Source: Caecitellus pseudoparvulus (Eukaryota; Protista; Bigyra: Bicosoecida). Taken from it: 64,000 nucleotides of DNA. Shown piece by piece: positions 26,564-46,019 of this stretch (positions are counted from its first letter, which is position 1; every line of letters begins with the position of its first letter). A program made the translations under genes and the position numbers. The stretch lies in assembly GCA_965644315.1 (NCBI GenBank), contig CBFFRQ010000062.1, forward strand, positions 62,001 through 126,000, read 5' to 3'. The notes under the pieces are model-generated. The model had not been told where the DNA came from and did no database searches. It saw nothing but the letters and a program-made list of their open reading frames with translations.

Positions 26564-29500
26564 CTATGCCAGCATAAAAGACCCAGTGCTGAGGCCATGC
26601 TCGACGCTATCCAGCAGGCGCCGCCGCATGACTTCGTCAGAGGTGTACTGCGGCACTTTGAGCTGGAAGAAGCAGGAGTGCGACTCCACCAGGCTCTCAT
26701 CCCCCCGCATGGTGTTGTTGTTGGCGTCCTTGTAGAAGGGGTACAGGAGGAAGAACACCACCTTACCCTCCCGGGTGATCCAGCCCGCCTCACCACGTGG
26801 CAGCTTGCTGCGGCCCCACGCGTACCGCACCAGGCGCGAGCGCTCCCTGGGCGTCATGCCTTCAAACACCCGCCAGAAGCGCTTCACAACTGGGTGCTCC
26901 AGGCTGTACGGCGTGCCGTACTTAGTGTGCTTCATCAGCATGTCTTGGTCGATGTCCGACGGCCCACACACGAGGGTGTGCAGGTCGCTCCACCGACACA
27001 GCTGCACTGCACGTCCAGGCACGATGGAGAGGAGGCCGGAGCGGATGGCAGCCAGTGGCCGCTTCAGGGGCGCAAAGGCCTGCTGCATGGCCAGTGCCAT
27101 GTACTGCTTGGCGTTGGCGGGCGTGACGGGGGTGGTGGCGCCGCTGGGCAGCAACTCCTCCCCCACGCGCTCCCCGCCGCTGGCGCCTCCCCGCCGCCAG
27201 GGCGACCGGTACACAAACATCTGCGCCGCAAAGTGCGTGTCCCAGCCGGGGACCGCCTCGGCGCTGGCATCAGGTTGGCCCTCCACGCCCCGCAGCATGG
27301 CTGCCATGCGGCCCAGGCTGGCGTGCAGGGCAGGGTCCACGTGGCAGAGGTCAGAGAGGTCCAGCTCCTCGCCACAGAGGCTCTTCCAGACGAGGGGCGC
27401 CACGGTGAAGTCCAGCCAGGCGCGCGTGCGCCAGGACAGCCCCATGAGGATGCCCACGAACCTCCACATGGCCAGGGCCCGCACGATGGGCGTGGCGTCC
27501 TCCTCCGCCCCCGTGTGCTCCGCCGCCTCGGGCACCTCGCTGGGCGGGCGCATGAGCAGGGCCAGGTTGGGCACCCACACGTCATCGTCAGCTTCGGCGG
27601 CAGAGCCCACCACCGTGAAGAGGTTGATGTTGGACTGCGGTGCGGCGAAGAGGTCGTTCACGGCGCGCGTGATGCAGTCACGGTAGATGCCGCCCCAGTC
27701 GATGCCCGGCTCCCCCGCCAAGGCCACCTTGAACATGCGGTCCTTGCTGTCCAGGCTGGAGCGCAGGCGCGCCGCACGGTGGTGCCGCAGCTCCCGGAAC
27801 ATCTGCGCGAAGATGCAGGTGGAGTTCATGACGTCGGCGCGGCCCTCCTCCTTGCTGGCGGTGGCCAGCTCGTTGTCCAGGGTGATGGCCACACCAGAGT
27901 CCTCGTACGTGCTGGTGCGGTTGATGGCTGCGTTCAGCAGCTCCCCCTTGGTCTCGGCGAAGATGAGGTGGCTCACGGTGCGCAGCAGGGCGCCCGTGCT
28001 CCACGGGCCGGCCGAGCCAGACGTGTCCACCAGCTTCAAGCACCGGTTCACGAGGGTGTTCAGGATGATGAGCAGGGCTGCGCGCAGGCGCAGGGTGGCC
28101 GTGTCCAGCAGCGTCAGGGCGGGGTACGTCCGCTCATCCCCCGGCGCCAGCTGCAGGTTCCACACCTCCAGCTCCCGCAGGCGGATCTCCGTCTTGGAGG
28201 CCCGCATGCGCATCCACTCCACCAGCTCCACATCCACCTCCCCGATCAGGGACGCGAACTGCGGGTGGGAAGGGGACAGGCAAGTCCCTGCGGGGGTGCC
28301 GATGTGAGCCAGGCAGTGCGGCAGGCGGCCGCTGGCCGTCGGCTGCAGGGACAGCCCGTGCACGTTTGCGATGTGCCCGCCGGAGATCAGCACCATGGCG
28401 CGCTGGATGGACACGAGGCTGTTGGTGGTGAGCTGTAGGTTGGGGCGCCCTTGCACCCGCCGCCCGCCACCCCGTGCCGCGCCGCCGTCGTGCGCCAGCT
28501 CTGCCGCGCGCAGCACCCACAGGTCTGGGATGCGGGAGGCAGTGGCGAGGGACTTGAGGACTTCCCGGGCATACGCCATGGCTGTGAGGCCTGGCAGGCC
28601 CTCCAACGCGTACACCTGGGTGGAGGGGTCCTCCAGCATGCCCTGCGCGACGCCCATGGGCGGGAACCACTCGGCGTCGTCGCCGGCGAGGCTGGTGACG
28701 CCGCCGGAGAGCGTCGCGCGATCTGAGGTCGTGAGGCCCGCCTGCAGCAGCGGCGTCGGCGTCAGCGACGCGATGGGCGTGAAGGCGGACCACTTGTCGT
28801 CCAGCATGAAGGCGGCACCGATGCCGGTGCTGACCAGCTCGTTGGCTTGCAGCGCGGGCAGGGGCAGGAAGGCAGCAGCCATGCTGGAGGCCTTCTTGGT
28901 CACCTCCCCCACGACGCTGCCCAGGTGGGCCGTCACCCGCTCCATGGGCGGGCGCCGCTGCAGGTCGAAGTGCATGGGCACGGAGAACAGGCGGGTGAGG
29001 AGGCCGATGACGTGGGGCTTGTGGGGCGCTCGGGGGGTGGCGAGGTAGTTCAGCAGGATGTTCACGATGTCCCCATTGTGCACTGCCCCCCGGTCCAGCT
29101 GGGACCGCGGCAGCGCCACCTCCGCCAGCATCTCCAGCACCCAGCACCCCCACAGGAAGGACGGCGAGGAGGCCTGCTGCCCCACACCAGCCCAGGCAAT
29201 GTTGTTCACGGCGCGCACTGTGCAGCGGAAGCCCCAGTACTGGTCCCCCACCCGCCGGCGCCCCCGTGCCGCGCCACTGGAGCCCACCGTGTGCTTGTAG
29301 TACAGCACGCCGTCAGGCGTGTGCGCCAGGAAGGGCACAAAGGCGTAGTGGCCGCCCCGGAAGCGCGCCAGCACCTCCGTGTGTGCGGCGTCTGCGTAGA
29401 AGGTCAGGTTGGCCTCTGGCTCGGCGGGGTTGGTGCAGGTGTTGGGGTCGAACATGACCCACATGGCCCGCGCGCCGGGCAGGCACACGGCACCGGCGCT

Positions 29501-32500
29501 GTCCTCGTGGGCCGGGTGCGCGCTCTGCACGTCCTGCGTCGCGGCAGCCACTGCCTGGGCTTGGTGGGACATGATGCTGAGGTGCTTGTTCACCTCCCCC
29601 ACCAGGGCCACCAGGAGCGGGCCGCCGTCCACTGGCTCGCTCGCCAGCAAGCGCGTGACGGTGCTGGTCAGGACGGCGGTGGCGGCGCGGCCAGACGTGG
29701 CGTCGCCCCCCAACCCCTGCAGCCCCACGTCCCCTGCCGCGTCCGTGTCCACAGGCACCGCCACGCCCGCAGCAGCTTCGGAGGCGCCCAGCAGGCGCAG
29801 CAGGGACAGCAGGGACTGCGCGCCTCCCAGGTGGGCCAGGGTGATGCTGCTGCCGGCGTCACTGGCCAGCAGCGTCAGCAGCAGCCGGCGCGTGGCATCG
29901 CCGAGGCCATCCAGGGCCAGCCCCGCCAGGCAGGGCAGCCAGCCCAAGCCGTCCCCTGCGCCGCCCTGGCGCTGGAATGCCGCACAGTGCACGGCTGACA
30001 CGAGGGCGGACTGCATGGTGGCGCGGGTGGCGGGGGCACCCAGGGACGCCAGAGCACCGGACACCAACGCCTCGCTGGGTGCGGCGTCCATGCCCACCAC
30101 GGACAGGTCCGCGCCGTACCCGCCGACAGCCAAGTACACCCATGCCCGAGGGACGAGAATGGTGCCCTGCCCCGGCACGTCCACTGCCGCCATGTCCCGC
30201 CAGGAGCTGCGCCCTTCCCGCGCTGTGCCCAGCCCCAACTCACACGCTGCGTGCACGGCCTGCGTGGGGCCAGCTGTCGTCGCGGCCGCCTCCCACGCTG
30301 CCACAGCGGCGGCATGGCTGGCAGGGGCGGACAGGGTGCCCACCGTGCCGGCCGTGGCGTGGAGGGCGGCGGCGGCGATGCCTGCCGCGGCGCCAGGCGT
30401 GGCGTCTGGGCTGCTGCAGTGCAGCGTGGCTGGGCCGTGGGGGGGCGGCGGCACCACCACCACCACGGCCCCCGCCGGAGCCAGGCTCACCATGCCCGAC
30501 TGGGCCGCCGTGGCGCCGGCGCTGACAGTCATGGCCTGGGAGGCAGCTGCCACACTGCCCGTGCTGAGGGGGGCCGCCACGTCAAAGGCGGCGAGGGGCA
30601 GCAGCAGCGCCCCTGCTGTGGCGGCAGCCGAGGGACTCAGGGCGGGCTGCACGCCTTGCAGCTGCAACGCCGCCATGCGCGTGGCGGCGCTGGGCAGGTA
30701 CGTCTCCACTGAGGCGCCTTCGCCTGGCTGCTCCCTGGATGTGGGGGGGCCGCCCGCGCCCATGCGGGACCCTCGGGACGCGACGAAGTCCCGCCCCGTG
30801 ATGAGGGGGCGCCCCAGGTTGATGCCTTCCACGGCGCTGGACATGGGCGCCTCGGCATCTGGGCCGCTGCTGGCGCCAGCGGAGGGACGGGCGGGGTCCA
30901 CGGTGTGGCGCCTGGACAGGGCCGTGCCGGAGCCGGCGCCCGCGCCGGGCTCAGGCAGGTGCAAAGCGGCCAGTGCAGCGCGCAGTTGGGGCGACGCCCG
31001 GTCGTGCGTCTGCAGCCACAGCCAGGCGTGGGGCAGGCTGCTGCCCGTCACAGACAGCGCTGCCACGGCCTCGCTGACGCTGCGCCCTGTCGCCGGCGCA
31101 AGGACGTTGAAAGCGAGGGGCCACAGGGTGGCGCTGCCCGCCAGGGTGCTGCCTGTGGACGCGTCGCCTGGGGCTGCCACGACGTCCACGGCGGGCGCCG
31201 CCATGGCCACTTCTTCGGGCAGGGACAGGGTGATCCAGTGCGAGAGACGAGCCGCCACCTCGCCCCCCTTCACCAGGATGTCTGGCAGGGAGACGTGGGG
31301 CGCGCGCCCTTCGCTGCCCAGGCGCAGCGCCGAGGCTGCGCTGCTGGCAGGGGCGGGGATGGCAGGCTGCCCGCTGCCCACGGCTGCGTGCAGGACCACG
31401 GCAGCGGCCGTGGCCTGCGTCAAGCCAGCCAGCGGCGCCACGGCAGTGGTGGCGTGGCGAGGCGGCAGCACGCCGCCACTCTCCGTCGCCCGGCACCACA
31501 CCTCCAGCACAGCCGCGTGCAGGGAGGGGGAGCCGGCGGGCAGGAATCCCAGCCCGGCCGTGATGGTGTGGGGCGGGGCCTGGGCGAAGTGGGCCAGACA
31601 CGGCAGCAAGCCAGGTCGCTGGGCCAGCAGGCCGGCGGCAGCGGGGAAGGCACTGCAGCCCAGCAGCAGCACACTCCCCGCGCTGTTCGCCAGCAGCAGG
31701 CTCTGGGCCCGGGAAAGGGCGTCGGGGTGGGGTGCGCGTGCCTGGCTCAACGCCACCGCCAGAGCTGGCAGGGCGCTGTGCAGGAGGCTGTCTTGCGCCG
31801 TGTCCAGGGAGTGCCCCAGCGCCCAGGCGGGGGAGGTGCGGGGGACTGCTGCCAGGCGGTGGCGAGGCAGCCACACGGGTTCCCCACGCACTGGCACGGC
31901 GCCCCAGGAGGCGCCGGGGGGCGGCACGGGCGTCGTGTCACAGCTGTCGTCCTGCACAACTTGCGTGGCTGGGGAGAGGAAGCCTGCGAGGGGCTGGGAG
32001 CCGGCCTGGGAGACGACACCCGCCTCCCCCGTCGCGCCGGGCCCGAGCATGACCAGAGCGTGGGAGGAGGAGGGGGATGTGGCGATGATGGTGCCCTGTG
32101 CGCGGCGGGTGCGCCCACACTCCAAAGGCTCCGCGCCCAGCACGTGGGAAAGCGGGTCCCCCGCCTCGCCCCCCTCCAGTCCACCCTCTTCCCCCCCCGC
32201 CGCCCCCGCACCGCCGTTCACTGTGGAGGCTGGCGCTGTGATGACGAAGCGCAGGCCAGGCGCCAGGCCAGGCGTGCCGCCGCCCAGGACAGCCATGGCG
32301 CCCCCCGCCTCCTCTGCCGTGCCGTGGTTCAACGCCGCCAGCAGGCCCTCGCGCACAGCCGGCGCCCAGGCCGGGAAGGCCAGCAGCAGGCGCAGTACGT
32401 CACAGGCGATGGCTGACGCGGCGACGGCAGTGTTGGCAGTGCCCACTGCCGCCACAGCGTCGCCGCAGCCCGCCGGACTGTCCAGGGCAAGGGGCGTGCC

Positions 32501-35500
32501 CCTGGCCGCCACACGCAGCAACAAAGCTGCCACACAAGTGGGATTCCCTCTTGCCGTCTGCAGGGTGCCGATGCCAGCCTGGTTCCGGACCACCGCGAGC
32601 ACTCCAGCCGCCTCGCCCGGGTCGTGGAAGGGCAGCACCTGGGCGAGCCCCTGCAGAGCCAGGCACCTGGTGTGCCCATCCGCGTCTGTCACGAGGGCCA
32701 GGAGGGCCAGCAGCGCGTGCTTGCACCGCACCAGGCGCCGCGTGAGGGGGTCCACGTCCCCCACCAAGACACCACCGCCATGCCGGGCACTGGGCACGGC
32801 AGCATCTGCCAGGAGGCTGCTGAGGCTGGCCAGCGTGGACTGCGCACCTGCGACGAAGGCAGAGGCATGCACAGGGCTGGGCCCGCTAACGCTGCCCACC
32901 AACTCCTCAGCACCCTCCGGAGCGGGCGAGGGCATGTCCTCGAAGACGAGGCTGGCCAGGGCGCCCCAGGAGCCGGAGGGGCAGGTGGCTGGCACGGGCA
33001 GCGCGCCGGCGGCCGGCTGGTCCAGGTGCCCCAGGTGGCGCCAAGCCAAGGCGGCCCTTGCTATGCGGCGCAGCATGTCCCCCAGCAGCTGCTGCTCTGC
33101 GTCTGCAGCTGCGGAAAAGGGCGTGGTGTCGCCCGCCAGGCGCAAGCCGCCGCGCAGCTCTGTGCTGGCGACGTGCACCGTCCACAGCAGGCGCCAGGCG
33201 CTGCCCAGGCTGGCCTGCACAGCCCCCGCACAGGCACCCACGCTAGGGAGCAGGGCACTGGCCAAGGAGCCCCAGCCACTGGACGAGACGAGGGCGGCGC
33301 CTTCGAGCACCTTGGCCGCCTCAACAGGCAACAGCACCCCGGGCGTGCCCAGCAGCTCAGTGTATGCCAGCAGGGCCGTCTCGGCATCCAGCCACGGCAA
33401 GGCGTGGGGGCGCAGACTGCCGTGCAGGACATGGGCCACTGCGGCATGGGGGGAAGCCAGGGGTTGCCCCGCCACAGCGCTGGCTGCACGCACGACGGCC
33501 GAGGGTGGCGGCACCAGGCGCTCCTGGGCACCCCGGGCAGTGTACTGCAGTACTTGCAGGGGGCACAGCTGCCCCGCTGCCACTGCGGCACGCAAGAGGG
33601 CAGGCGGGTGAGCATGCCACGCACCCTCCCCGCCGCCTGCAACCTGTGTCCAGGGGGCTAGGCAGGCAGGGGAGGGGGCAGGATCCGCGGCAGGCGCGAG
33701 GGACTGCAGTAGCCCGCCCTCCTCCAGCACCTCCATGTCCAGGGGGGAGGCGGGATCCCAGTGCACCAGCCATGGCAGCAGCGCCGCCCTGACGAGCGGC
33801 AGCGGAGCCCGTGTATCCGCAGCCTTGACCAGCACACTGCCCAAGTGTGCGAACAGGCCCTGCACGGCGGCCGCCAGGGCCTCTCGCAGCGCACCGTCCA
33901 CAGCGGCCACGTTGGTCAGCGGGTGGTGCCGGGTGCCAAAGGCGGCCACCAAGGCCGGCGGCAGCGCAGGTAGTGCGCGCAGACCGCCTGGCGCGGCGTG
34001 ACTGACGCTCCAAGTGGCACACTGGTGGTGTTGGTCATCAGACTCCACCAAGGCGCCCCCTCCCTCCGCCTCCTGCCCGTGCACCGTCTGTTGCAGGCTC
34101 TTGTCAGCGGCGGGCCCAGGGCCGTACGCACTCCCAGAGGTGAGTGTCGCCCCCAGCGGCCACATGTCGCCCTGCCCGCCGCCCCACGCGCCGCCCGGCA
34201 GCGCCAAAGCGTCGGCAGCTGCAGGCAGGGACGAGGCGGGCAACATGTCGCCTTCCTCCTCGTCGTCGCTGCCGATGGCCACGTCGCCGTCGCCGTCCTC
34301 GTCACTGCTCGCCTGTCCCACCCTGCCCAGGCGCCCACTGGCCGCGGCAGCCGCCAAGCCCGACACTGCCGCCACACTGCGCCCAGTGGTGGCTTCGATG
34401 CCGGCAGCCAACTGCGCCTCACGCACCCCTCGCAGCGCCGACCGCAGGTCCCCCAGCAAGATGCACCGCAGCCAGTCCCGCACAGCTTCACCGTGCTGCG
34501 CAGCTGTTCGGCGAGGGCTGCCAGCCCTGACTGGGACCAGCTGCCGCAAGGCCACTGCAGGTGGCGCATCCTCGCCAGCTGCCGTGAGCGCAGCGGCCAC
34601 CGACGCGCCGGCCTCCTGCGCGGTGTCTAGCAAGGTGCCCAGAGCACGCAGGCCGAAGATGCGCTGCTGGGCTCGGCAGCGCTGCGCCACGAGCACGCCA
34701 GCCAACACCTCGGGGGGGGCGGCCCACCCCTCCAAAGCGTACATGGAGACAGCCCGCAGGGACACAGCCAGCGGGTTGAACTTGTGCTTGGTGGAGTGGG
34801 CGTCGGGGTGTGCCGGGGGCAGGATGGCGCCTGTCCGGGCAGCCTGCTCCAGGCTCTTGTGGGCCCAGGGGAAGGAGTGGGGCAGGGGCAGGGTGGCGGG
34901 TGGCGCGAGGCACGCTCCCGCCGCCGCCTCGGAGGCAGCCGACACCGCCTGCACGGTGCTGGCGGCCATGGCGGGCTGGAGCTGGGCAGCCACCCACACA
35001 GGGGCAAAGGCCACTCCCACCGCCGCCTCCCCCCCCGGTGCCCCCTTCGTCGACACGCCCAGCTGAGCGCGAGGCAGCAAGTCGCTGACTGCGTCTGCCG
35101 ACGCCACAGAGCCGGCCGCCGCCAGCTCTTCGATGCTGTCCCCCGCCGCACTGTCGTGGTGTGGCGTGGAGAAGCCAGGGGGGGGTGTCATGTGAGGGGA
35201 GGCGTACGCGGTGGAAGGGGGCGCGCGCCAGTGCAGCGCCTTGGCCTGCTCCGCCTCCACGGGGGACAAACAGTCCCCCGCCACGCAGGTGTACACGAAC
35301 CCGCCAGCCAGGAATCCCAGGCGGCGGATGACGCCGTCGTACAGGTCTTGGAAGCCGCCGGGCGCACGCACCTCCAGCTCACGGGGACCCCGCGTGCCAC
35401 GCCGTTCGCGGCCGGGTCTCGGCGCCAAGCCACTGGGCCGGCGTGTGAGACTCGGCGGCGCGGCGCTGGGCGCAGCGGCCCCGCCCCCCCCCGCCGCCGC

Positions 35501-37625
35501 CCCAGCTGCCGCCTTGCTGGCGCCAGGGGACACGGGTGGCGCGTCGCCGGTGGGGTGTGGCTCAGCAGAGGCAAAGCCGGTGGCCATGTCCCCCAGCAGG
35601 CGCCGGAAGGCGACCACGCTGTCCCACACCTCCAGCATACGCTCCGAGGGCCGCGGTGTGGACTCCCCCTCCACAGCTTGCTTCGCTTCCAGCCACAGGG
35701 GCAACTCCTCTTCACCCTTGCTTTCACTGTGAGGTGTGTCGGGCGCCTGGTGCCAGGCACTGGCCAGCAGGGATGACGCCAGCAGCAGCACCTCTGCGTG
35801 TTCGTAGCGGTCGTGTCCATGGCGGCGCTTGAGGGCGCCTTTGAGGGGCTTGGCGGCGCCCAGCCACCCACGCAGGGCCTTTCCGCGAGGCGTCGGGCAG
35901 TACGCCTCGGCTGCGGTGGCCACTTCGGTCAGGACCCCCCCGCCAGGCGCAGCAGCGAGGACGTCAGGCTGGGGTGCCGCCGCCCTCGCCGCAGCGACGA
36001 CACTGGGCGCCTCCCGTACACGGGAGTACGAGCGGCGGAAGGACGCCTGCCCACCCCGCCGGGGCACAGAGGTGTACTGGAACAAGGAACACACAAACTC
36101 CTTGGCTGGGTCGGGTTGCGGGGCTGCGACGCCCACCTCTGCTGCGCCCAACGCAGCACGAGCCATGTCCGCGGGACTGCTCTGGGCCACGGCAGTGGGC
36201 ACGTCCACGCCAGCCTTGAAAGCAGCTTGCAGGCCCTCTACGCTGCTTGCTATCGCCGTCTGCACTGTGCTGGCTTGCTCCTTGAAGGGTGGCAGGGCGG
36301 CGCCGGGGGCAGCTGCCTCGCCTACCGCCAGGGCAGGGGCAGCCACACCACCCGATAGGATGCCAAGGCCCACCCAGGGGGCCAGCTGAGCCTCCTCTTC
36401 GCTGACACGCACGCCGGCAACGCAGCCCCGCGCGCAGTGCCCAGCCAGCGACACTGCCGCAGCCGCCAGAGCAGCGAGGGGGTGTGCCACGCCAGCGAAT
36501 GCCGCCGCTGGGCCGCCTGAGGCGGTGGGGTCGTCGCTGGTGCGGGAGGAGGTGGAGGAAGTGGAGGAGGCCGTGTTCACCGCTGCGAAGCGCCAGGCGG
36601 TGGACACCAGGTGCTGCAGCGCCGCCTGGCCGGCGCCCCCCCGCAGCAGAAGGTGCAGGAGCGCAGAGACCAGCGCGCCAGCGAAGGGCGCCACAGCCCC
36701 GGCAAAGGCCGCATTGTGCGTCAGAGCTGCCATGGCGGGCAAGGCGGATGGCAGCAGCGACACCACGTGTGTGTCTTGCAAGGCGTCCAGGCTGTCGGCA
36801 TTGTTCGCAGCCGTGATTGCTTGTGCGGAGCGAGCCAGCAGTGTGAGGCTGTACCAAGTGGCAGCCACCCAGGGCGCCGAGTCAGGCTCCAGAGAAACAG
36901 CGCACATGGCATACATGTGCAGCTGTGACGCTTGGCCCGTGATAGCGCGCTCCAGGGGCTGTGTCAGGGTGCTGCCCAGGGAAGCGTGCACAATGTCTGA
37001 CACGCCAGTGGCAGCATATGTCTCCAGGCTTCCAACCACTTCCATGGTCACCCACGCCACCTGGCCCTGCACGTCGGCCTCGCCCAGGTCTTTCGTCAAG
37101 CCCAGCACACAAGCATGCAAGTGCACCTTGCCTCGACCCTGCACACAAGGATGCGGGGGCATGTGCACAGGTGGTGCCCAGGCGTTTCTGCAGCGTGCCA
37201 GCCTCGCACGCAAGAGCTTGCAACAACCCGCAGGCAAGACTGCAAACAAGGCTGACACACATGGGCGAGTCTTTACGCACCAGAAGGTAGAACAGCGCTT
37301 GCATGAGGCGGTACCGGGCCATGTACGGCGAGGTGGAGGGCGGCAAGCGCAGGGCTGCCATGGCGTGGTGTTGGAGGGTGCCGCCTGGTGCCCGTACTGA
37401 CGAGAGCCCAGCAGCCAGGCGCGCCTCCCCAGCTGCCACGTGCGCTGCCACGGCCTCCAGGCCCCGCGCGTCCAGGCACAGCTCGTCCGCTTGGAAAGCC
37501 AGGTGTGCCGTCGGCGCATGCAGGGCTCCCAGCAGTGCATCGTCATGGGACAGAGCCTTGACCAGCGTCGGCAGCTCCACCGGCACCGCCAGCAGGCGCT
37601 GCCGGGTGAGGCCAGCCATGATCAC
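26564..37625 (-). CDS. Giant HECT-type E3 ubiquitin ligase (>3,600 aa; 5' exons unresolved, may extend to ~37.9 kb)
   Basis: C-terminal HECT: FKVALAGEPGIDWGGIYRD, FVGILMGLSWRT, RFWRVFEGMTPRERSRLVRYAWGRSKLP, catalytic SHSCFFQLKVPQY. An upstream exon lies in ORF 36882-37625. Confidence 0.88.
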
Positions 37626-38161: not shown

Positions 38162-41100
38162 ATGAAGTTTGTGGAGGCGCTGGCATCGTACCTGCCTAGT
38201 TTGATTGTGCATCACTTGAAGGACCATGACACGACCAAGACGCCGCCGACACGGCAAACGTGAGTTGCCCGCTGCTTCCCTTTCGGCGTGGTTGAGCGGC
38301 AGTGCCCGCAGCAACACCCTGCCTGCGGCGACGTGCGCACCAGGCCCTGGCAGGGCAGCCAGGCGACCAGAGGCCCTGGACTTTTCCGCACTGCGCGTGG
38401 GGTGGTGCCAGCAGGTGCCTCCTGCCGGCACCACCCCGCTGGCCTCGCTTGTTGCGGAACCCCCAGCGTTTCGCAGTGGCACGCCAACACCTTGCACCCC
38501 CCACAAGCGAGCCTTAACGGAGCCCCTCCCCCGCGCCCCCACGTTGCACAGATACGATACAGTCGTAATGTTCGCGGATGTGAGTGGCTTCACAGCCTTG
38601 TCGGAGGCCATGGCCAAGTACGGGCCGGAGGGCGCCGAGTACCTGGCCAAGCATTTGAATGCGTACTTCGGCCAGATGGTGAAAGCCATCGCCAGCGAGG
38701 GTGGGGACATTTTCAAGTTTGCAGGCGACGCCATGATCGTCTTGTGGCCAGATCTGGGCACCATGGAAGCCCGCGCGCGCCGGGCTGCCCAATGTGCCCT
38801 GGCCATCCAGGAAGCTCTGCACGCTGCCGAGCTGAGCGAAGGCGTCACCCTCAGCGTCAAGATCGGCATCGGCCTGGGCAGGGTGTCCGTGCTGCATCTT
38901 GGCGGTGTGCTGGACCGCATGGAGTACGTCGCTGTGGGCGACCCCCTCGTGCAGGCCTTCAACGCGGAGGGGCACGCAGAGGCTGGCGGCGACGCCATCG
39001 TGTCCCCCGCCGTGTGGAAGGTCATCGAGCCCTTCGTGAACGCGCTGGAGGTGTTCCCAGACGGCTTTGCTAAGCTGACGTGCGAGGGCAAGGGCATCGC
39101 GCCGGCTGCCTCGGGCGGCGAGGGCCCCATCAAGCAGCGCGCCAAGCGTGTGAACAAGACCCGCGCCATGAAGGACCTGGGCCTGGACAACCTGGAGGGC
39201 ATCCCCGGCCTGGAGAAGCTGCTCAAGTGCTACGTGCCGGGCGCCATCCTGCCCTGGGTGTCACCGGAGTCCGCCGACCTGGAGTCGTGGGGAGGTGACC
39301 TCCGCAACGCCACTGTCATGTTCGTGAACTTGGGCCTGAAGGAGCACGACCTGCTGGCGGCAGCCCACTACGAGGATGCCCTCGGGCGGGCGCACAAAGT
39401 GCTGGTGGAGGTGCAGACCGCCGTGAACCAGTACGAAGGCGCCGTGAACAAGTTCCTCATGGACGACAAGGGCAGCACGCTCATCGCGGTGTGGGGCCTG
39501 CCGCCGCTGTCCCACGAGGATGACCCCACGCGGGGAGTGCTCTGCGGACTGGCCATCTGCAGCCGCCTGTGGGACATGGGCCTGGTAGCTTCCTGTGGCA
39601 TCACCACCGGCGTCGTGTTCTGTGGCGTCGTGGGCAGCACCACCCGCAAGGAGTACTCCGTGCTGGGGGACACCGTGAACCTGTCAGCCCGCCTCATGCA
39701 GCGGGCGTGCAAGAGTGGCGGCGGCGTCATCTGTGACCTGGCAGTGCGCTCCCTGGCCCAGCAGGGCCTGGAGTTCAAGGACGAGGGGGAGATCAAGGTG
39801 AAAGGCAAGAGCAAGCTCATCAACATCTTCAAGCCCTACCCCAAGGACTGCCTGTCATCCATGCCCCCCACCAACCCGCCCGGATCCGAACCCAGGGTGT
39901 ACCACAACGCCTACCAGACCCAGGTGACCAGCTACCACAGCTACGCCACCCTGCGCCCGCACTTCGTAAACCCCATCCGGTCCCAGAGCACGCCAGGGGA
40001 GGGTGGCCAGGCGGCTCCAGCACCTGCGCCCACCTCCCCTGTGGCCGGGGCCAGCCGTCGCGCCACGAAGCTCATGGGTGCCCTGGGCGGGGGAGGCGGA
40101 GCCCAGGCCACCGTGGACATCGCTGGTGGCTTGAAGCCGGGTCCCCTGGACCCCGACGCGGTGCCACGCGTCGCCCCCACCGCCTTGAACCCCAATCGCA
40201 CGACAGTGCTGCTGAAGAAGCCAGCCGCAGCGTACACCTCTGCCTCCACCGTCACCATCGAGGCCCTGAAGATCCACGTGCCTGTGAGCCTGGCCCGGGA
40301 CAGCTGGCTGCTGGAGGACACCGACTACGCCACGCTGGCCACGGAGACCGTGTCCCTGGATGTGTCGGCAGGGGGCTACAAGACCCTGCGGGAGCTGCGT
40401 GATGCGGCTGTGGCGGCGGCACAGGCACAGGGCCTCGTCCCGGCCGGCGCCGACGCCAACGAGCTGCGGCTGCAGGTGGACAACACCGCTGCCATCATTC
40501 CTGCGAGCGACCTGCCCATGCTGTGGGCCGGCGTCTTCATCGCAGAGATGGCCACGATGGACCCCACGAAGTTCGACGGTACGCTGGCCGTCGTGCTGGT
40601 CAAGGGCCGGGACGAGGCCGTCCTCATGCCCCGGCACTACGCCGCGCGGCAGGCCATGGTGGAGGGCAAGATCCGCCTGCTGGCTGAGGGGCAAGGCGGC
40701 TGCGTGTTGCTGGAGGGCGCCATGGGCACCGGCAAGACCTGGCTCCTGCGGCAGTTCGTGGGGCAGGTCATGCCGGAGCGCACGACGATGTTCTGCGCGA
40801 ATGGCTCGCCCTTCGCCAGGTCCACGCCCTTCGCGGTGTGGGGCGCCCTCCTGCGACAGTACGTGGACCTGTACGGCGCCAGCCACTCCATCACCTCCCG
40901 GACGGCGGTGGCGCAGGACTTGCTCAAGGGCCAGGTGCCGGACCAGCGCCTGCTGCCCCTGGCCAGCCTGCTGAACCCCATCCTGTCCGTGAACCTGCCC
41001 GACAGCCCTGCCTTGGACAAGCTGACGCCGGGGCAGAAGGAACGCGCCACGTCGGCCCTCCTCATGGCCCTGGTGCGCAGCATGGTGGCAGGGGGCGTCC

Positions 41101-44100
41101 CCGCCACCCTGGTCATTGACGACGCCATGTACATGCACGCCGCTTCATGGGACCTGGCCCTGCAGCTGGCAGCTGCCTGCTGCGCTCCAGCCGGCTCCAC
41201 CGACAGCCTGCCCCTGCTCCTGGTCCTGTCCTCGCGCATGCCCAAGCCGTACGAGGACTCCCTCATGACGGCGGCGCCCAAGAGCTACATGGCGCTGCTG
41301 GAGGCGCCGTTCGTCACCGCTGTGCGCATCTCCCGCCTGCCCCGCCTGCACGCCCGGGCGCTGGTGCAGGCCACCATGCAGTGGCACGGCAGCGTGTCAG
41401 AGGAGGTGCACCTGCTGGTGGAGGCGCGGGCTCAAGGCAACCCGCTCATGGTGCAGGAAGTCCTCCTGTCGCTCCTGAACAAGGGCAGGCTGGTCGTGGC
41501 GCCTGACTCGGAGGAGCGCTTCATCGTGCAGCGGCGGGTGCTGGGCACAGCCCTGGTTCCCTTCTACGGCCTGGACTTCAGCGGGGGAGGTGGCCCGCGG
41601 CCGGCTGGCTCCCGCCGCTCCTCCTTCCACGGCCAGCTCACGAGCAGCAAGGCTGGGCAGGCCAAGTTCGGCCTGGGCGGCAAGCTGGAGCTGGTGGCCG
41701 GCCTGGCCACGCCCGTGCCTTTCTGCCACAAAGTCAACTCTAACTTGAGCATGCAGGTGGACCGCCTGCCCACCATGGAGCAGATGGTGCTGAAGGTGGG
41801 CGCCATCATCGCCGGCGTCCGGCAGCGGGAGGAGCTGGCGAAGCTCGCCAGTGAGGGCGCCGGCCGCTCCGCCAGCACTGCCTCCGCCGTGGCCAAGCGC
41901 CTCTTCGAGCACCGTTTCAAGTTCTCTGTCCTCTTCGAGGTGTTCCCTCTGAAAGACCCGGGTGTGAAGGACGCCCTGGGCGGCCTCTGCCAGAGCCTCG
42001 TGGAGCGCGGCTTCATCGTCAAGTCCCTCACCGCTGCAGCGGGCGCTGGGGAGGGCAAGGCCTCCGCCATGGTCAGCCTGAAGGGTGACGCAGCCCCGAC
42101 GGCGGCTGCCGCTGGCGCAGGCGAAGAGGCGGGCGCCATCAGCTCCAAGGAGCCCATGTTCGAGTTCACGCACTCGTTCGTGTCGGACACGGTGCGCCTG
42201 CGCGTGCTGGCGGAGCAGCGCAAGCAGCTGGAGAAGGGCATCCAGGAGTCCTTCCGCCGCAACGCCGAGTTCCTGCGCCGGGTGTACGTGACCCGGGTCA
42301 TGGAGAGCGGCGGCGGCGGCAGCAAGCCCAACAAGTCTGGCTGGCTGACGGTGCGCAAGAACGTGCCCAGCACCAACCGCCGCACTGGTGTCTTCGGCTT
42401 TGGCGGCGTGAAGAAGGACTGGAAGCGGCGGTGGGTGTGCATCACGGGAGACAGCCTGCAGATGTTCAAGGAGGAGGACGGACTGAAGCATGGCCACACG
42501 CCAGTGCAAATCATCCCTGTGGCCGCCTCCACAGCCACCATGCTGCCCCCCAGCCAGGACCTGGAGTACCAGAACGTCTTCCGCGTGGACTCCTCCCACT
42601 ACACCAAGAAGGGCGTGCATGTGGATGAAAGCCGCTCCTTCTACATGGCTGCAGAGGACGCTAGCACGGCGGATGACTGGGTGTTCTGGATCTCCTTCAT
42701 GGCGGACAAAGCAGGGGGCGAGGGCGGCATGCAGGCGGGAGGTGGTGGCGGCGGCGAGGAAGCCACCTCGGCAGCAGCCCGCCTCATTACCAGCAGCTCC
42801 GTGCACAGCCTGGCGTCGGCGGGCCCCGAGGTGTTCCCGCGGACGCGCCTGGTGGTGACGGTGGAGGGGGCGCAAGACCTGCCCCCCGCCAAGCAGACGG
42901 GGCACACCTCCCCCTACGTCACCCTGGCAGTGGGCACCGTCGAAAAGAGCACAGCTCCCGTCATGTTGGACCGGTGTCCCTCCTGGGCCGACACGCTGGC
43001 CCTGCCGGTGGCGCCCACCGCCACCGCGGAGGGCGTCCTACGGGTGCACGTGTGGGACAAGGACAAGTACGGCGCCGACAGCCTCATTGGTGTCGCGGAA
43101 GTGCCGCTCATCTCCCTGCCCCTGTCTGAGCCACCGCCCCGCCCGGCCCTGGATGAGCTCCTGGCTGCCCGTGCCGCTGAAGGCATCCCGGAGGCGGAGG
43201 AGGAAGAGGAGGTCCTGGATGACTTCGACGACGAGGAGGAGGAGGAGGAGCACGAAGCGTACCTGGAGGCAGCTCGGGCCGAGACAGAGGCGCAGGCGGA
43301 GGTGGAGACGACGTCCCTGGCCATCGTCGCGCCTGGCGTGCTGCTGGGCGCCACCACCCGCGCCATCCAGGCTGCAGGGGGCAACTGGAAGGCGCCCCTG
43401 GACTACACTGCCATCATGCAGGAGGCCCGGGAAGTGGACGTCAACCGTGGGGCCATCACCCTGCGCCTGCGCCTGGTGGCTGAGCACGGGGACACCGCGG
43501 CCATCCAGGCAGCCCGCACCGCCTTCACAGAAGCTGCGGGCACAGAGGACGACACCGACGCGACGCATCAATCCCTCGCGGCACGCGCGCTGTTCCTGCT
43601 GGGGCGGGCAGACCTCTCGTGGCTGTCGAGCCTGGAGGCCGGTGCGGCATCTGGAGCAGCCTCCGCTGCTGCAGGTGCTGGCTTGGTGGACATGTCAGGG
43701 GAGGGGCCCGCCGATACCGCCACGCTACTGGACCGCTTGCAGAGCCTGTCCGACATGCTGACCGGCATGGAGGAGACGGGTGCCGCCACTCTCACGAAGG
43801 ACGCCCTGGCCAACCTCCGGCGCGGGTTGGGCCAGAGCATGGCCACTCTGCAGCACATCTCAGCTGGGGGACTGGGTGGCGCAGGCGCAGACACTGCCGC
43901 AGCCATGGCCATCGCCGAAGGCGTGGGAGGCAGCAGCGCAGCAGGCGCCCAGAGCTTCTTGACGATGGTGTCGTTGCTTGACCTGGACGAGACCAACCGA
44001 GAGTGGCTGGCGAGCCAGTACTCCAAGGCCGGCGAGAGCGAGGGACGCCCCGCAGGCAGGTCCAGTGGCTCCCGCAAGCCCAAAGCAGCCCGCCAAAGCC

Positions 44101-46019
44101 ACGCCGGCCGCAACCTTCGCCGCAGCAGCGCCATCGTCATCAACCCGTCTGACTCAGGGACGCTGGCCAAGGTTCGCCGGCTGAGTCGCGGCCCCAGCTC
44201 CCTGGCCGCCGTGAGCGAGCAGGAGGTGCCCGAGGGGCAGGAGTGGGGTCCAGATGCGCCGGGGTCCATGGAGCCGGCCCAGCTGCACCTGGAGCGGTGC
44301 CTGACCGTGCCTGGGTACTTGGCTCTGGGAGGCGATTCCCTCGCCTACGTGCAGACGTGGGGGCGGTATGGCTGGGGGGTGCAGACCCTGCGGCACGAAG
44401 AGCCAGAGGACCCCAGCGAAGGGGAAGTGGCTGCCTCTGCCGCGCGTGGCGAGGAGGGCGGCGGCTGGTTCGTGGACCTGCACGAGCGGCTGACGTACGA
44501 AGACACAGAGGACAACCTGCAAGGCCCCTTCACCGCCCGGGACATCTTCGAGTGGCACGAGGAGGGGTACATGCCCGACGACATGATGATCCGCTGCGGC
44601 ACCGAGGAGGACGGCGGCGAGGTTGTGCTGTTGCAGGACATCATCTCCACTCTGGCCATTCGGGCTCACCTGTCCCGCCTGCGGGAGCTGGTGTACGAGG
44701 CGGGTGAGGCGGGCAATGTGGACTCCTGGGGCTTCAACATGTTCGCGCTGGAGATGGAGCACCCCGTGCACGCCATTCCCATCGCCTCCTACGTCTTCGC
44801 CGCCTTGCGCCTGCCCAAGTTCTTCTCCATCCGCGAGGACACCTTCGTGGCCTTCCTCGGCGACGTCTGCGACCGCATGTGCCTGTACCCGGACAGCACG
44901 CCGTACCACAACTACTGGCACGTCACAGACGTCTTGCATGCTGTGTACGTCATGCTGACCCAGTTCGGCGCAGGGGCGCTCCTGACACCTGTCGAGACGC
45001 TGGGGCTGGCTGTAGGCGCCCTCTGCCACGACCTGGAGCACCCTGGCCTGGGCAACTCGTACCAAGTCAAGGCCCAGACGGAGCTGGCCCTGCGGTACAA
45101 TGACACGTCGGTGCTGGAGAGCCACCACGCGGCCCTGGCCAGCTTGGTCGTGCGTGACACGGCGCTGTTCGGGGAGTTGGCGCCGGAGGTGTCCAGCGCC
45201 GCGCGCAAGGTCATGCTGAACGCCATCCTGGCCACGGACATGACGTGCCACTTCGGGCTGACTTCTGACCTGCGCGGCGTCGCGGAGCGCCATGCCGACC
45301 GCTTGGCGTACTTGACCTCCTCGGCCCGCCGTACGGCCATCGAGGCGGCTGCAGTGGCCTCCAACGCCACCTCCCACTACGGTGTGGAGGGCACGCCCCA
45401 CAAGCCGGCAGACGGGTACTCCCTGGCGGCCAGCATTCCCCAGGCGGACCGGGAGATCATTTACAAGACCATCCTGCACGCAGCTGACATCTCCAACCCC
45501 TGCAAGCCGTGGGAGCTGTGCAAGCTCTGGTCCGACCGGGTGGTGGAGGAGTTCTTCATGCAAGGCGACCGGGAGAAGCAGGAGGGCCTGCCAGTGTCCC
45601 CCAACATGGACCGTGACAACACCCACCAGGCCAAGATGTCCCTGAACTTCATCGATTTCATCGTCGCGCCGCTGTTCGTGGCCATGACCACCCTGCTCCC
45701 ACGCATGCAGCTGGCCTGCGACACGCTCTCCTCCAACCGCGACCAGTGGGAGAGCATCGTGCAGCAGGACTTGAAGGCCACGAAGCCCAAGGGGCGGGGG
45801 GGCGCCGCCGCGGTGGAGGCAGAGCGCAAAGTGTGGAAGCGCCGGCAGACCGCCTTTCAGGAAGTGCTCATGCCCCTTGCAAAACTCGGCGCCACGAACG
45901 CTGCCACGGACGACGCCCGCGCCATGGCGCTGTCTGGCTTGCAGACATTCGTCGCAGCCAACGTGGTGGCTGAGGAAGACGAGCCTGCCAGCAAGGGCAG
46001 GCGCAAGTTCCGTGCATGA
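38162..46019 (+). CDS. Soluble adenylyl cyclase (ADCY10-type) fused to P-loop NTPase, PH, C2, GYF and class I cyclic-nucleotide phosphodiesterase domains; intron 38260-38551
   Basis: Exon 1 MKFVEALASYLPSLIV; FADVSGFT, KFAGDA, NKFLMDDKG, EYSVLGDTVNLSARL; EGAMGTGKT; PH KSGWL..WKRRW..DDWV; C2 VHVWDKDKYGADSLIG; GYF QGPFTARDIFEWHEEGYM; PDE YHNYWHVTD, HDLEHPGLGN, LESHH, ATDM, HAADISN, EFFMQGD. Confidence 0.9.

What the first reader, a model, noticed from the sequence alone, without database searches (positions are those of the whole stretch)
38162..46019. Single-chain cAMP make-and-break enzyme: sAC cyclase + STAND-like NTPase + PH + C2 + GYF + class I PDE
Seen: after one short first exon, a continuous reading frame encodes two class III cyclase half-domains (~38560-39830) with the metal Asps (FADVSGF, FAGDA), the ATP-selecting Lys (NKFLMDDKG) and the Asn/Arg pair (NLSARL). 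These are followed by Walker A EGAMGTGKT (~40710), PH (~42330-42700), C2 (~42845-43120), GYF (~44485-44640) and a complete HD-type PDE (~44900-45760). Known: ADCY10/sAC has the tandem cyclase + P-loop layout but no PDE, and the plant AC-PDE fusion CAPE has the PDE N-terminal to the cyclase. Inference: this is a differently built bifunctional enzyme that could create a membrane-tethered, lipid/Ca2+-gated, self-terminating cAMP microdomain, for example for flagellar or feeding signalling.
Basis: partly seen in the sequence, partly recalled or inferred. Interest (0 to 1): 0.88.

Follow-up and report, generated by a model that had tools for sequence, protein, structure and literature searches.

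The report
Soluble-type adenylyl cyclase fused to phosphodiesterase
One real gene of a marine, probably non-photosynthetic stramenopile encodes a ~2,520-residue protein that joins a soluble-type cAMP-making enzyme to a cAMP-breaking enzyme; the layout is conserved in many protists and sits unnamed in databases, but I found no paper describing it and no one has tested it.

Summary
The gene has a 98-nt first exon (38162-38259), a 292-nt GT..AG intron and one 7.47-kb exon (38552-46019). It encodes, in order, a tandem sAC/ADCY10-like class III cyclase, an AAA+/STAND-type P-loop NTPase, PH, C2, GYF and a C-terminal class I PDE.

All cyclase catalytic residues and all PDE metal ligands are present and conserved in about 30 aligned homologues. 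Every segment is under purifying selection.

It is not unique. Of 194 proteins fetched, 60 carry both modules, and 59 of these have the cyclase first. They come from stramenopiles (Cafeteria, Hondaea, Paraphysomonas, Chrysoparadoxa), a dinoflagellate (Durusdinium) and a rhizarian (Plasmodiophora). They include a complete transcriptome ORF with the full architecture. Nine literature searches found only CAPE, which has the reverse order and a single cyclase domain.

- The C2 domain lacks two of five canonical Ca2+ ligands.
- The sAC bicarbonate arginine is a phenylalanine.
- The PDE's "invariant" glutamine is a serine across most of the family. Active MpCAPE also lacks this glutamine.

A single cyclase-to-PDE transcript was not shown in this organism.

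Verdict: a real, conserved, uncharacterised variant of the bifunctional cyclase/PDE idea. Interest is moderate.

The parts
38162..38259 (+). Exon 1: 32 codons plus 2 nt, the conserved N-terminal peptide of the family (MKFVEALASYLPSLIV...).
   Evidence: The N-terminus matches more than 20 homologues. The same exon lies upstream in relative L001.
38260..38551 (+). Intron, 292 nt, GTGAGT...CACAG, phase 2.
   Evidence: Position and phase are conserved in L001 although the intron sequence differs. No RNA read was laid across it.
38552..46019 (+). Exon 2: 2488 codons plus the stop codon, with no further intron detected.
   Evidence: No joints appear in the RNA or DNA contigs laid over 39400-45399. 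dN/dS is below 1 in every segment.
38553..39060 (+). Cyclase half-domain C1. It carries both metal Asp residues (FADVSGF, FAGDA) and the Lys equivalent to sAC Lys95. The sAC Arg176 position is Phe (QAF).
   Evidence: Aligns to human ADCY10 at E 1e-47. Residues are conserved in the family.
39285..39812 (+). Cyclase half-domain C2. It carries the adenine-selecting Lys (NKF), the Ser at the sAC Thr405 position (EYSVLG), and the Asn/Arg pair (NLSARL).
40260..40622 (+). Small alpha/beta domain just before the P-loop. It is modelled confidently but its fold was not identified.
   Evidence: Model m5774dd05a81e, residues about 30-150, pLDDT mostly 60-94. The fold search barely tested this part.
40623..42317 (+). 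P-loop NTPase module: nucleotide-binding domain, helical domain and winged-helix-like domain. Walker A (GTGKT) is at 40713-40739 and Walker B (LVIDD) at 41109-41132.
   Evidence: Pfam AAA_16 at the cut-off. Motifs are conserved. AF2 model pTM 0.75. VIA Z is 14.1 to Cdc6/Orc1, 11.4 to PAB2304, and about 10-11 to an NLR, Dark (Apaf-1 homologue), Avs3 and a STAND-TPR protein; MalT scores 9.7.
42330..42684 (+). PH domain with a basic WKRRWV strand.
   Evidence: Pfam PH, 34.4 bits. Weak PDB hits to the DAPP1 and GRP1 PH domains.
42846..43128 (+). C2 domain core. The three loop-3 Asp residues are kept, but the two loop-1 Asp residues are replaced by Lys and Ser. An acidic insert follows (about 43143-43322).
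   Evidence: Pfam C2, 51.7 bits. Alignment to synaptotagmin-3 C2A. Family alignment.
43968..44027 (+). Conserved short motif in the spacer (..LDLDETNREWLASQYSK). The Trp is invariant in 21 homologues. Function unknown.
   Evidence: A profile search of the PDB found nothing. AF2 gives it pLDDT about 50, so it is not confidently docked.
44487..44630 (+). GYF domain (GPF...W..EGYM), a beta-beta-alpha-beta-beta fold, followed by a long helix that leads into the PDE.
   Evidence: Pfam GYF, 28.6 bits against a cut-off of 25.7. AF2 pLDDT about 80. dN/dS 0.07.
44904..45723 (+). Class I (HD-type) PDE catalytic domain. The motifs YHNYWH, HDLEHPG, ATDM and HAADISNP are all present. A disordered insert of about 50 aa lies at about 45290-45440.
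   Evidence: Pfam E 4e-73. Best PDB hit is PDE4D, E 5e-50. Family conservation. AF2 pLDDT above 90.
45639..45641 (+). Ser codon at the position of the 'invariant' purine-binding Gln (PDE4D Gln369). The context is MSLNFIDF, against SQVGFIDY in PDE4D.
   Evidence: This position is S, T or A in the main sAC-fusion PDE clade, T in CAPE and Q in other PDEs.

Best explanation
This is one real, expressed-looking gene for a soluble, roughly 2,520-residue signalling enzyme of a conserved protist family.

What the parts do (shown or strongly implied by sequence):
- The N-terminal pseudo-heterodimeric C1-C2 cyclase is of the soluble-adenylyl-cyclase (ADCY10) type and has every residue needed to make cAMP from ATP.
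- The C-terminal class I PDE has every metal ligand needed to hydrolyse a cyclic nucleotide.
- Between them lie an AAA+/STAND-type NTPase, as in sAC and in bacterial cyclase-AAA_16 proteins, plus three adaptor domains: PH, a probably Ca2+-independent C2, and a proline-motif-binding GYF.

Inferred mechanism:
- PH/C2 and GYF place the protein at a membrane or partner.
- The NTPase acts as a nucleotide-dependent conformational switch.
- Synthesis and breakdown on one chain make cAMP signals local and brief, or reciprocally switched.
- This would work the way CAPE, bacterial GGDEF-EAL proteins or Rel synthetase-hydrolases work.

The catalytic activities, the PDE's substrate and the coupling between the two modules are all inferred, not shown.
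For: Domains and residues:
- Continuous frame and Pfam domains.
- Full C1-C2 alignment to human sAC at E 1e-47, with the D47, D99, K95, K334, N412 and R416 equivalents kept and Ser at the T405 position. These are conserved in about 30 homologues.
- PDE metal His/Asp motifs and the clamp Phe are kept and conserved.
- NTPase Walker A and B are conserved, and the fold is confirmed.

Family and selection:
- The same cyclase-first architecture occurs in 59 of 60 two-module proteins.
- These include GenBank/UniProt entries from Cafeteria, Hondaea, Durusdinium, Plasmodiophora and Chrysoparadoxa.
- They also include an MMETSP transcript with a complete ORF carrying all six domains.
- dN/dS against a relative with 70% overall amino-acid identity is 0.09 for the cyclase, 0.22 for the PDE, 0.07 for GYF and 0.27-0.43 for the other segments apart from a C-terminal tail at 0.14.

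This organism:
- Contigs of a metatranscriptome RNA-seq run lie scattered from 39795 to beyond 45399, with no joints.
- The genome has at least 25 genes with cNMP-binding domains, so effectors exist.
- MpCAPE's PDE also lacks the Gln and is active, preferring cAMP (PMC5159850).
Against: - No enzymatic data exist for any member of the family.
- The PDE lacks the Gln that normally reads the purine, so its substrate cannot be predicted.
- No single RNA contig bridges the cyclase and the PDE in this organism. The RNA-run contigs could be carried-over DNA, because the stretch I laid has no intron to tell RNA from DNA.
- The sAC bicarbonate Arg is absent and the C2 Ca2+ site is incomplete, so the regulatory inputs are unknown.
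- Relatives exist with a degenerate cyclase but an intact PDE (P0023, P0026). The scaffold therefore does not always need both activities.
Confidence: 0.7

Rival explanations
1. Cross-talk enzyme rather than a self-terminating one. The cyclase makes cAMP, but the Gln-less PDE prefers cGMP or another cyclic nucleotide, or has low affinity. The protein would then link two messenger pools instead of erasing its own product.
For: The purine-reading Gln is Ser, and the neighbouring Gly/Ala is Asn, in the whole main clade. PDE9 (cGMP-specific) ranks close behind PDE4 among PDB hits. The genome has about 7 other cyclase genes, some of which could be guanylyl cyclases.
Against: MpCAPE-PDE has Thr at the same position and strongly prefers cAMP. 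The best PDB matches are cAMP-specific PDE4 enzymes. A tight fusion to an adenylyl-type cyclase across a wide range of protists is most simply explained by a shared substrate.
Confidence: 0.15
2. One module is regulatory rather than catalytic in this protein. For example, the PDE domain could act as a cAMP-binding sensor, or the cyclase could be a pseudo-enzyme scaffold.
For: Family members with a clearly dead cyclase exist: in P0023 and P0026 the Asp, Lys, Asn and Arg are all lost. The PDE carries an unusual pocket residue and a disordered insert of about 50 aa.
Against: In the window's protein and about 30 relatives, every catalytic residue of both modules is intact. The two modules are also the most conserved parts of the protein (dN/dS 0.09 and 0.22).
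Confidence: 0.1
3. Gene-model or assembly artefact: two neighbouring genes (cyclase-NTPase and PDE) are read through as one.
For: High-GC genomes give long chance ORFs. No single RNA contig spans the whole gene.
Against: There are 2488 stop-free codons with six Pfam domains in one frame. The layout is identical on independent contigs and in one 15.7-kb contig of another run. The architecture is conserved in dozens of taxa, including complete transcriptome ORFs. The spacers are under purifying selection.
Confidence: 0.03

Closest known systems
Mammalian soluble adenylyl cyclase (ADCY10/sAC)
   Same: Tandem C1-C2 class III cyclase in one soluble chain; it is the best PDB match (E 1e-47). The catalytic residue set is the same, including Lys95, Lys334 and Asn412/Arg416, with Ser in place of Thr405. 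The N-terminal ..LP.LIV.. peptide is shared. The cyclase is followed by a P-loop (AAA_16/STAND-type) NTPase.
   Different: The Arg176 of the bicarbonate site is Phe. No TPR region was detected. The C-terminal half is instead PH + C2 + GYF + class I PDE. sAC has no PDE.
CAPE (COMBINED AC with PDE) of Marchantia and other streptophytes with motile sperm (PMC5159850, PMC8115329, PMC11032487)
   Same: One polypeptide carries a class III adenylyl cyclase and a class I PDE. The PDE lacks the canonical Gln (Thr in CAPE, Ser here). The proposed role is to shape local cAMP.
   Different: The order is reversed (PDE N-terminal, cyclase C-terminal in CAPE). CAPE has a single cyclase domain, not an sAC-type tandem. 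CAPE shows no AAA_16, PH, C2 or GYF in the precomputed Pfam list. In a quick tree CAPE's PDE falls among Gln-bearing PDE9-like domains, apart from this family, so the fusion is independent.
Oomycete and ciliate sAC-like cyclases (FYVE + tandem cyclase + AAA_16 + PH, about 1,500 aa; some annotated 'Adenylate cyclase type 10')
   Same: The cyclase is 42-49% identical, and the cyclase-NTPase-PH core is the same. In the cyclase tree they nest among PDE-bearing members.
   Different: They end after the PH domain, with no C2, GYF or PDE. Many have an N-terminal FYVE domain.
Bacterial bifunctional second-messenger enzymes (GGDEF-EAL proteins; Rel/SpoT synthetase-hydrolases)
   Same: By analogy only: the making and breaking domains of one messenger sit on one chain, usually under reciprocal regulation.
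   Different: The folds and messengers are unrelated. No homology is claimed.

Membership tests
sAC/ADCY10-type class III adenylyl cyclase | Two cyclase homology domains (C1, C2) in one chain that align end to end with sAC. | tested here: met
   phmmer against the PDB: query residues 14-416 align to ADCY10 residues 31-428, E 1e-47. Pfam finds two stretches.
sAC/ADCY10-type class III adenylyl cyclase | Catalytic set: two metal Asp residues in C1; adenine Lys, Thr/Ser, and the Asn/Arg pair in C2. | tested here: met
   All are present and conserved in about 30 homologues.
sAC/ADCY10-type class III adenylyl cyclase | Bicarbonate site (Lys95 + Arg176 of human sAC). | tested here: not met
   The Lys is kept (FKFAGDA). 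The Arg176 position is Phe in a conserved QAF motif. Bicarbonate response was not testable here.
sAC/ADCY10-type class III adenylyl cyclase | P-loop NTPase after the cyclase, followed by a TPR-like region. | tested here: inconclusive
   The NTPase is present. No TPR Pfam hit was found. No full-length sAC sequence was available to compare.
Class I cyclic-nucleotide PDE (PF00233) | HD-domain metal ligands (H..H, HD..H, the D of ATDM, the D of HxxDxSN). | tested here: met
   Pfam E 4e-73 covering profile positions 1-236 of 238. Motifs are aligned to PDE4D and conserved.
Class I cyclic-nucleotide PDE (PF00233) | The 'invariant' purine-binding glutamine (PDE4D Gln369) and the hydrophobic-clamp Phe. 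| tested here: not met
   Gln is replaced by Ser (45639-45641). The Phe is kept. S, T or A occupies this position throughout the main fusion clade, while other PDEs of the same genome keep Q. MpCAPE, which is active, also lacks the Gln.
CAPE | PDE N-terminal and a single cyclase domain C-terminal. | tested here: not met
   Here the order is cyclase first, as in 59 of 60 two-module relatives, and the cyclase is a tandem. CAPE's layout is taken from PMC5159850 and PMC8115329.
STAND / AAA+ P-loop NTPase | Walker A and B motifs plus helical and winged-helix domains after the nucleotide-binding domain. | tested here: met
   GxGKT and hhhhDD motifs are conserved. The AF2 model has pTM 0.75. VIA Z is 14.1 to Cdc6/Orc1 and about 10-11 to an NLR, Dark, Avs3 and a STAND-TPR protein; MalT scores 9.7. 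The data cannot separate the STAND clade from the Orc/Cdc6 clade.
Ca2+-dependent C2 domain (synaptotagmin/PKC type) | Five acidic Ca2+ ligands in loops 1 and 3. | tested here: not met
   The loop-3 D-x-D...D is kept. The two loop-1 Asp residues are Lys and Ser in the alignment to synaptotagmin-3. These positions vary across the family.
GYF domain | GPF...W...GY(F/M) signature and the beta-beta-alpha-beta-beta fold. | tested here: met
   Pfam 28.6 bits, above the 25.7 cut-off. The motif is conserved. AF2 secondary structure fits at pLDDT about 80. Binding to proline-rich ligands was not testable.

The most novel reading that the evidence does not exclude
An ancient fusion, spread across stramenopiles, alveolates and rhizarians (SAR), hard-wires an sAC-type cyclase to a distinct Gln-less subfamily of class I PDE. 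A STAND-type NTPase and PH/C2/GYF adaptors sit between them. The result would be a self-contained generator of local cAMP pulses, or a reciprocal make/break switch, in flagellated protists. Purine recognition by the PDE would differ from the textbook 'glutamine switch'.
Probability: 0.4. Interest if true: 0.7.

Novelty: new variant of a known kind. Interest (0 to 1): 0.55.

Why it matters
- How cells confine cAMP to microdomains is a long-standing question. In animals it is answered by scaffolds (AKAPs) that bring separate cyclases and PDEs together.
- A natural single-chain cyclase + PDE of the soluble type, conserved in many protist lineages, offers a minimal system to study that coupling. 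It is also a possible tool for building self-limiting cAMP signals.
- The family shows that a class I PDE can do without its 'invariant' glutamine across a whole clade. This bears on how PDE substrate specificity is understood.
- The family extends the sAC lineage, with its NTPase, well beyond animals. Some members are transformable (labyrinthulomycetes such as Hondaea/Aurantiochytrium).
- All of this rests on sequence alone. No activity has been measured.

Tried and rejected
1. Spacer motif and PDE4. From memory, I suspected that the conserved spacer motif (..EWLASQYSK) resembles the PDE4 UCR2 capping helix. A 21-sequence profile searched against the PDB gave only chance hits. AF2 does not dock the motif (pLDDT about 50). 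The idea is unsupported.

2. Diatom class II cyclase + PDE. Precomputed PF03497 hits on diatom PDE proteins suggested such a fusion. My own Pfam scan of P0076 found only the PDE, so I dropped it.

3. Exon 1 against the PDB. The peptide is too short and gave only chance hits. Exon 1 rests on the match to family N-termini instead.

4. ESM Atlas search with family member P0088. It returned only cyclase/AAA_16 clusters at scores of 0.87 or less, and no large cluster with both modules. This says nothing about novelty.

5. A paralogue in the same genome. The two other long PDE genes are a GAF-PDE and a PDE with no other domain. This gene is the only locus that appears in both the cyclase and PDE lists.

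6. Literature. Nine searches found only CAPE and a remark on oomycete 'CAPE-like' proteins said to share CAPE's domain organisation. The library lacks most subscription journals, so absence is not proof.

7. Organism identity. It was not established. The best named relative is Cafeteria roenbergensis (64% identity in the cyclase). No LHC genes were found. The genome is 30.6 Mb and the window is about 59-75% GC. A bicosoecid-like heterotrophic stramenopile is an inference.

Each exon was handled by reference.


Full report
**The observation**

The + strand carries an uninterrupted ORF from 38226 to 46019 (2597 codons). The real start is the ATG at 38162, in another frame. That frame gives 32 codons plus 2 nt and then GTGAGT. 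Splicing 38259 to 38552 (acceptor ..CACAG) restores the frame and gives ..PPTRQ-T-YDTVVMFADVSGF... More than 20 homologues start with the same peptide (M-K/R-F/Y-x-E-x-L-A-S-Y-L/V-P..LIV..) and run straight into the same FADVSGF motif. A relative with 70% overall amino-acid identity on a metagenome contig (L001) has the same exon 1 and an intron at the same position and phase, with an unrelated intron sequence. Exon 2 was always given by reference, and exon 1 was compared on its own.

Pfam on the ORF gives these domains:
- Guanylate_cyc, two stretches
- AAA_16 (32.8 bits, cut-off 32.6)
- PH (34.4 bits)
- C2 (51.7 bits)
- GYF (28.6 bits, cut-off 25.7)
- PDEase_I (246 bits, E 4e-73, profile positions 1-236 of 238)

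No hydrophobic segment looks like a membrane span.

**Residue-level check: the cyclase**

The cyclase region aligns end to end with human soluble adenylyl cyclase, ADCY10 (E 1e-47, both half-domains). C1 holds the equivalents of the metal ligands Asp47 and Asp99, and of Lys95. C2 holds the equivalents of Lys334, Ser at the Thr405 position, and the Asn412/Arg416 pair. This is the adenylyl, not guanylyl, residue set, and it is the sAC division of labour between the two halves. All of these residues are conserved in about 30 aligned homologues. One sAC feature is missing: the position of Arg176, which together with Lys95 binds bicarbonate in human sAC, is Phe in a conserved QAF motif.

**Residue-level check: the PDE**

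The PDE aligns best with PDE4D (E 5e-50). It keeps the H..H, HD..H, ATDM and HxxDxSNP motifs and the clamp Phe, and all are conserved in the family. This is a clade trait:
- In a tree of 92 PDE domains the main fusion clade has S, T or A at this position.
- Other PDEs keep Q, including another PDE of the same genome, insect PDE9 and Chlamydomonas PDEs.
- The Marchantia CAPE PDE has Thr there. It hydrolyses cAMP much better than cGMP (PMC5159850).

The substitution therefore does not argue for a dead enzyme. It does leave the substrate open.

**The middle of the protein**

An AlphaFold2 model of exon-2 residues 540-1260, built with 25 homologues, reached pLDDT 77.5 and pTM 0.75. It shows a small alpha/beta domain followed by a P-loop domain, a helical domain and a winged-helix-like end.

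Structure searches gave these neighbours:
- Cdc6/Orc1, Z 14.1
- the archaeal Walker ATPases PAB2304 and SSO1545, Z about 11
- a wheat NLR resistosome, Dark (Apaf-1 homologue), Avs3 and a STAND-TPR protein, Z about 10-11
- MalT, Z 9.7

Walker A and B are conserved. 'STAND-like NTPase' is thus supported at fold level, though the data do not separate STAND from the Orc/Cdc6 clade.

In the C2 domain, the alignment to synaptotagmin-3 shows that the three loop-3 Asp residues are kept, but the two loop-1 Asp residues are Lys and Ser. These positions vary across the family. Ca2+ gating is therefore not supported.

The PH domain has a basic WKRRWV strand and weak matches to the phosphoinositide-binding PH domains of DAPP1 and GRP1. 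That is suggestive only.

A second model, of residues 1797-2425, reached pLDDT 70 and pTM 0.67. It gives a GYF-like beta-beta-alpha-beta-beta unit at pLDDT about 80, then a long helix, then a confident PDE domain above 90 with a disordered insert.

The spacer contains one short motif with an invariant Trp (43968-44027). I could not explain it.

**Is it one gene, and is it expressed?**

- The same protein is called on three independent public contigs. A 15.7-kb contig of another run covers the whole 6-kb stretch I laid, with 52 differences. An assembly chimera is therefore excluded.
- Against the L001 relative (70% overall amino-acid identity), dN/dS is 0.09 for the cyclase, 0.28 for the NTPase, 0.27 for PH and for C2, 0.30 for the spacer, 0.07 for GYF and 0.22 for the PDE. 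dS is about 1, so these values are rough. Even so, the whole length, spacers included, is constrained as coding sequence.
- A metatranscriptomic RNA-seq run has short contigs scattered from 39795 to beyond 45399, with no joints.
- A run guessed to be RNA has one 3.7-kb contig from 42327 (PH) to about 27 nt past the stop codon.
- None of this proves a single cyclase-to-PDE mRNA, and carried-over DNA cannot be excluded.
- Independent support comes from relatives. An MMETSP transcriptome ORF marked complete (P0006, 2304 aa) carries cyclase, AAA_16, PH, C2, GYF and PDE. A Paraphysomonas transcript (P0016/P0102) lacks only a detectable GYF.

**How widespread is it?**

Searching with the PDE part and with the cyclase part, while admitting only proteins of similar length, returned dozens of proteins with the same architecture. 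Of 194 proteins fetched, 60 have both an sAC-type cyclase and a PDE, and 59 of these have the cyclase first.

Named sources are:
- Cafeteria roenbergensis (64% identity in the cyclase; 3199 aa, with a C-terminal WW domain)
- Hondaea fermentalgiana
- Paraphysomonas
- Chrysoparadoxa australica
- Durusdinium trenchii
- Plasmodiophora brassicae

These are stramenopiles, an alveolate and a rhizarian. Their database names are generic ('Phosphodiesterase', 'class 3 adenylate cyclase').

PDE-less relatives include oomycete proteins with FYVE-cyclase-AAA_16-PH (some annotated 'Adenylate cyclase type 10') and proteins from Tetrahymena and Amorphochlora. In a quick cyclase tree they nest among PDE-bearing ones, and PDE presence changes at least 9 times. 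That fits an old fusion with later losses. Some 'losses' may be truncated gene models, and the tree is unrooted.

A few fusion proteins (Chrysoparadoxa and two others) carry a Gln-type PDE from another part of the PDE tree. That hints at domain replacement or a second fusion.

Two relatives (P0023, P0026) have a clearly degenerate cyclase with an intact PDE.

In the window's own genome (30.6 Mb, 215 contigs) there are 8 PDE loci and about 7 cyclase genes, and only this gene has both. At least 25 genes carry cNMP-binding domains. No LHC gene was found, so the organism is probably a heterotroph. The nearest named relative is Cafeteria.

**What it most likely does**

Shown by sequence: an adenylyl-type sAC-like cyclase and a metal-complete class I PDE sit on one soluble chain, and both are strongly conserved.

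Inferred: both are active; the PDE acts on the cyclase's product; the adaptor domains localise the enzyme; and the NTPase acts as a switch. cAMP signals would then be local and short-lived, or toggled between making and breaking. The closest working analogies are CAPE, GGDEF-EAL proteins and Rel enzymes.

I put 0.7 on this reading. The main rival, a PDE with another substrate that gives cross-talk, gets 0.15. A non-catalytic module gets 0.1. An artefact gets 0.03.

**Comparison with what is known, and novelty**

The cyclase half belongs to the sAC lineage by every catalytic criterion tested, but lacks the bicarbonate Arg and any detectable TPR region.

The protein is not a CAPE:
- the domain order is reversed;
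- the cyclase is a tandem, not a single domain;
- the intervening domains differ;
- CAPE's PDE falls elsewhere in the PDE tree.

The CAPE distribution paper mentions oomycete proteins with CAPE's own domain organisation, not this layout. Nine full-text searches found no description of an sAC-PDE fusion. The library omits most subscription journals, so this is not proof.

I class the gene as a new variant of a known kind (single-chain cyclase + PDE). It is real and conserved, but it is already visible, uncurated, in sequence databases, and nothing about it has been measured. Interest is moderate (0.55).

Noticed in passing
window 26564-37546 (- strand): A 3660-codon ORF lies head to head with the cyclase-PDE gene, with about 600 nt between the two starts. 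The matching gene on a public contig carries a HECT domain.
   Followed up: partly
proteins P0023, P0026 (also P0019, P0008): These family members keep the NTPase, PH, C2 and an intact PDE, but their cyclase is degenerate (metal Asp, Lys and Asn/Arg all lost) or absent. They look like a pseudo-cyclase branch of the same scaffold.
   Followed up: partly
window 43968-44027: A short motif in the otherwise poorly conserved spacer (..LDLDETNREWLASQYSK). The Trp is invariant and Asp and Leu nearly so in 21 homologues. There was no PDB match, and AF2 does not dock it.
   Followed up: yes
window 40260-40622: A small alpha/beta domain just upstream of the P-loop. Much of it is modelled at pLDDT near 90, but the structure search barely tested it, so its fold is unassigned.
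   Followed up: no
proteins P0114 (Chrysoparadoxa), P0109, P0113: These sAC-fusion proteins have a PDE domain that keeps the Gln and groups with other PDE types in a quick tree. That suggests a PDE replacement or a second, independent fusion.
   Followed up: no
L003 (G000:C13:616500-626499): In the same genome, a 1765-aa GAF-PDE gene lies next to a 797-codon ORF that carries three cNMP-binding domains. This is another compact cyclic-nucleotide gene pair.
   Followed up: partly
protein P0107 (Cafeteria roenbergensis): The closest named orthologue is 3199 aa. It shows cyclase, weak AAA_16, PDE and a C-terminal WW domain, but no Pfam-detectable PH, C2 or GYF. The adaptor set therefore varies within the clade.
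   Followed up: partly
window about 46046: A 3.7-kb contig from a run guessed to be RNA ends about 27 nt after the stop codon at 46019. That could mark a short 3' UTR.
   Followed up: no
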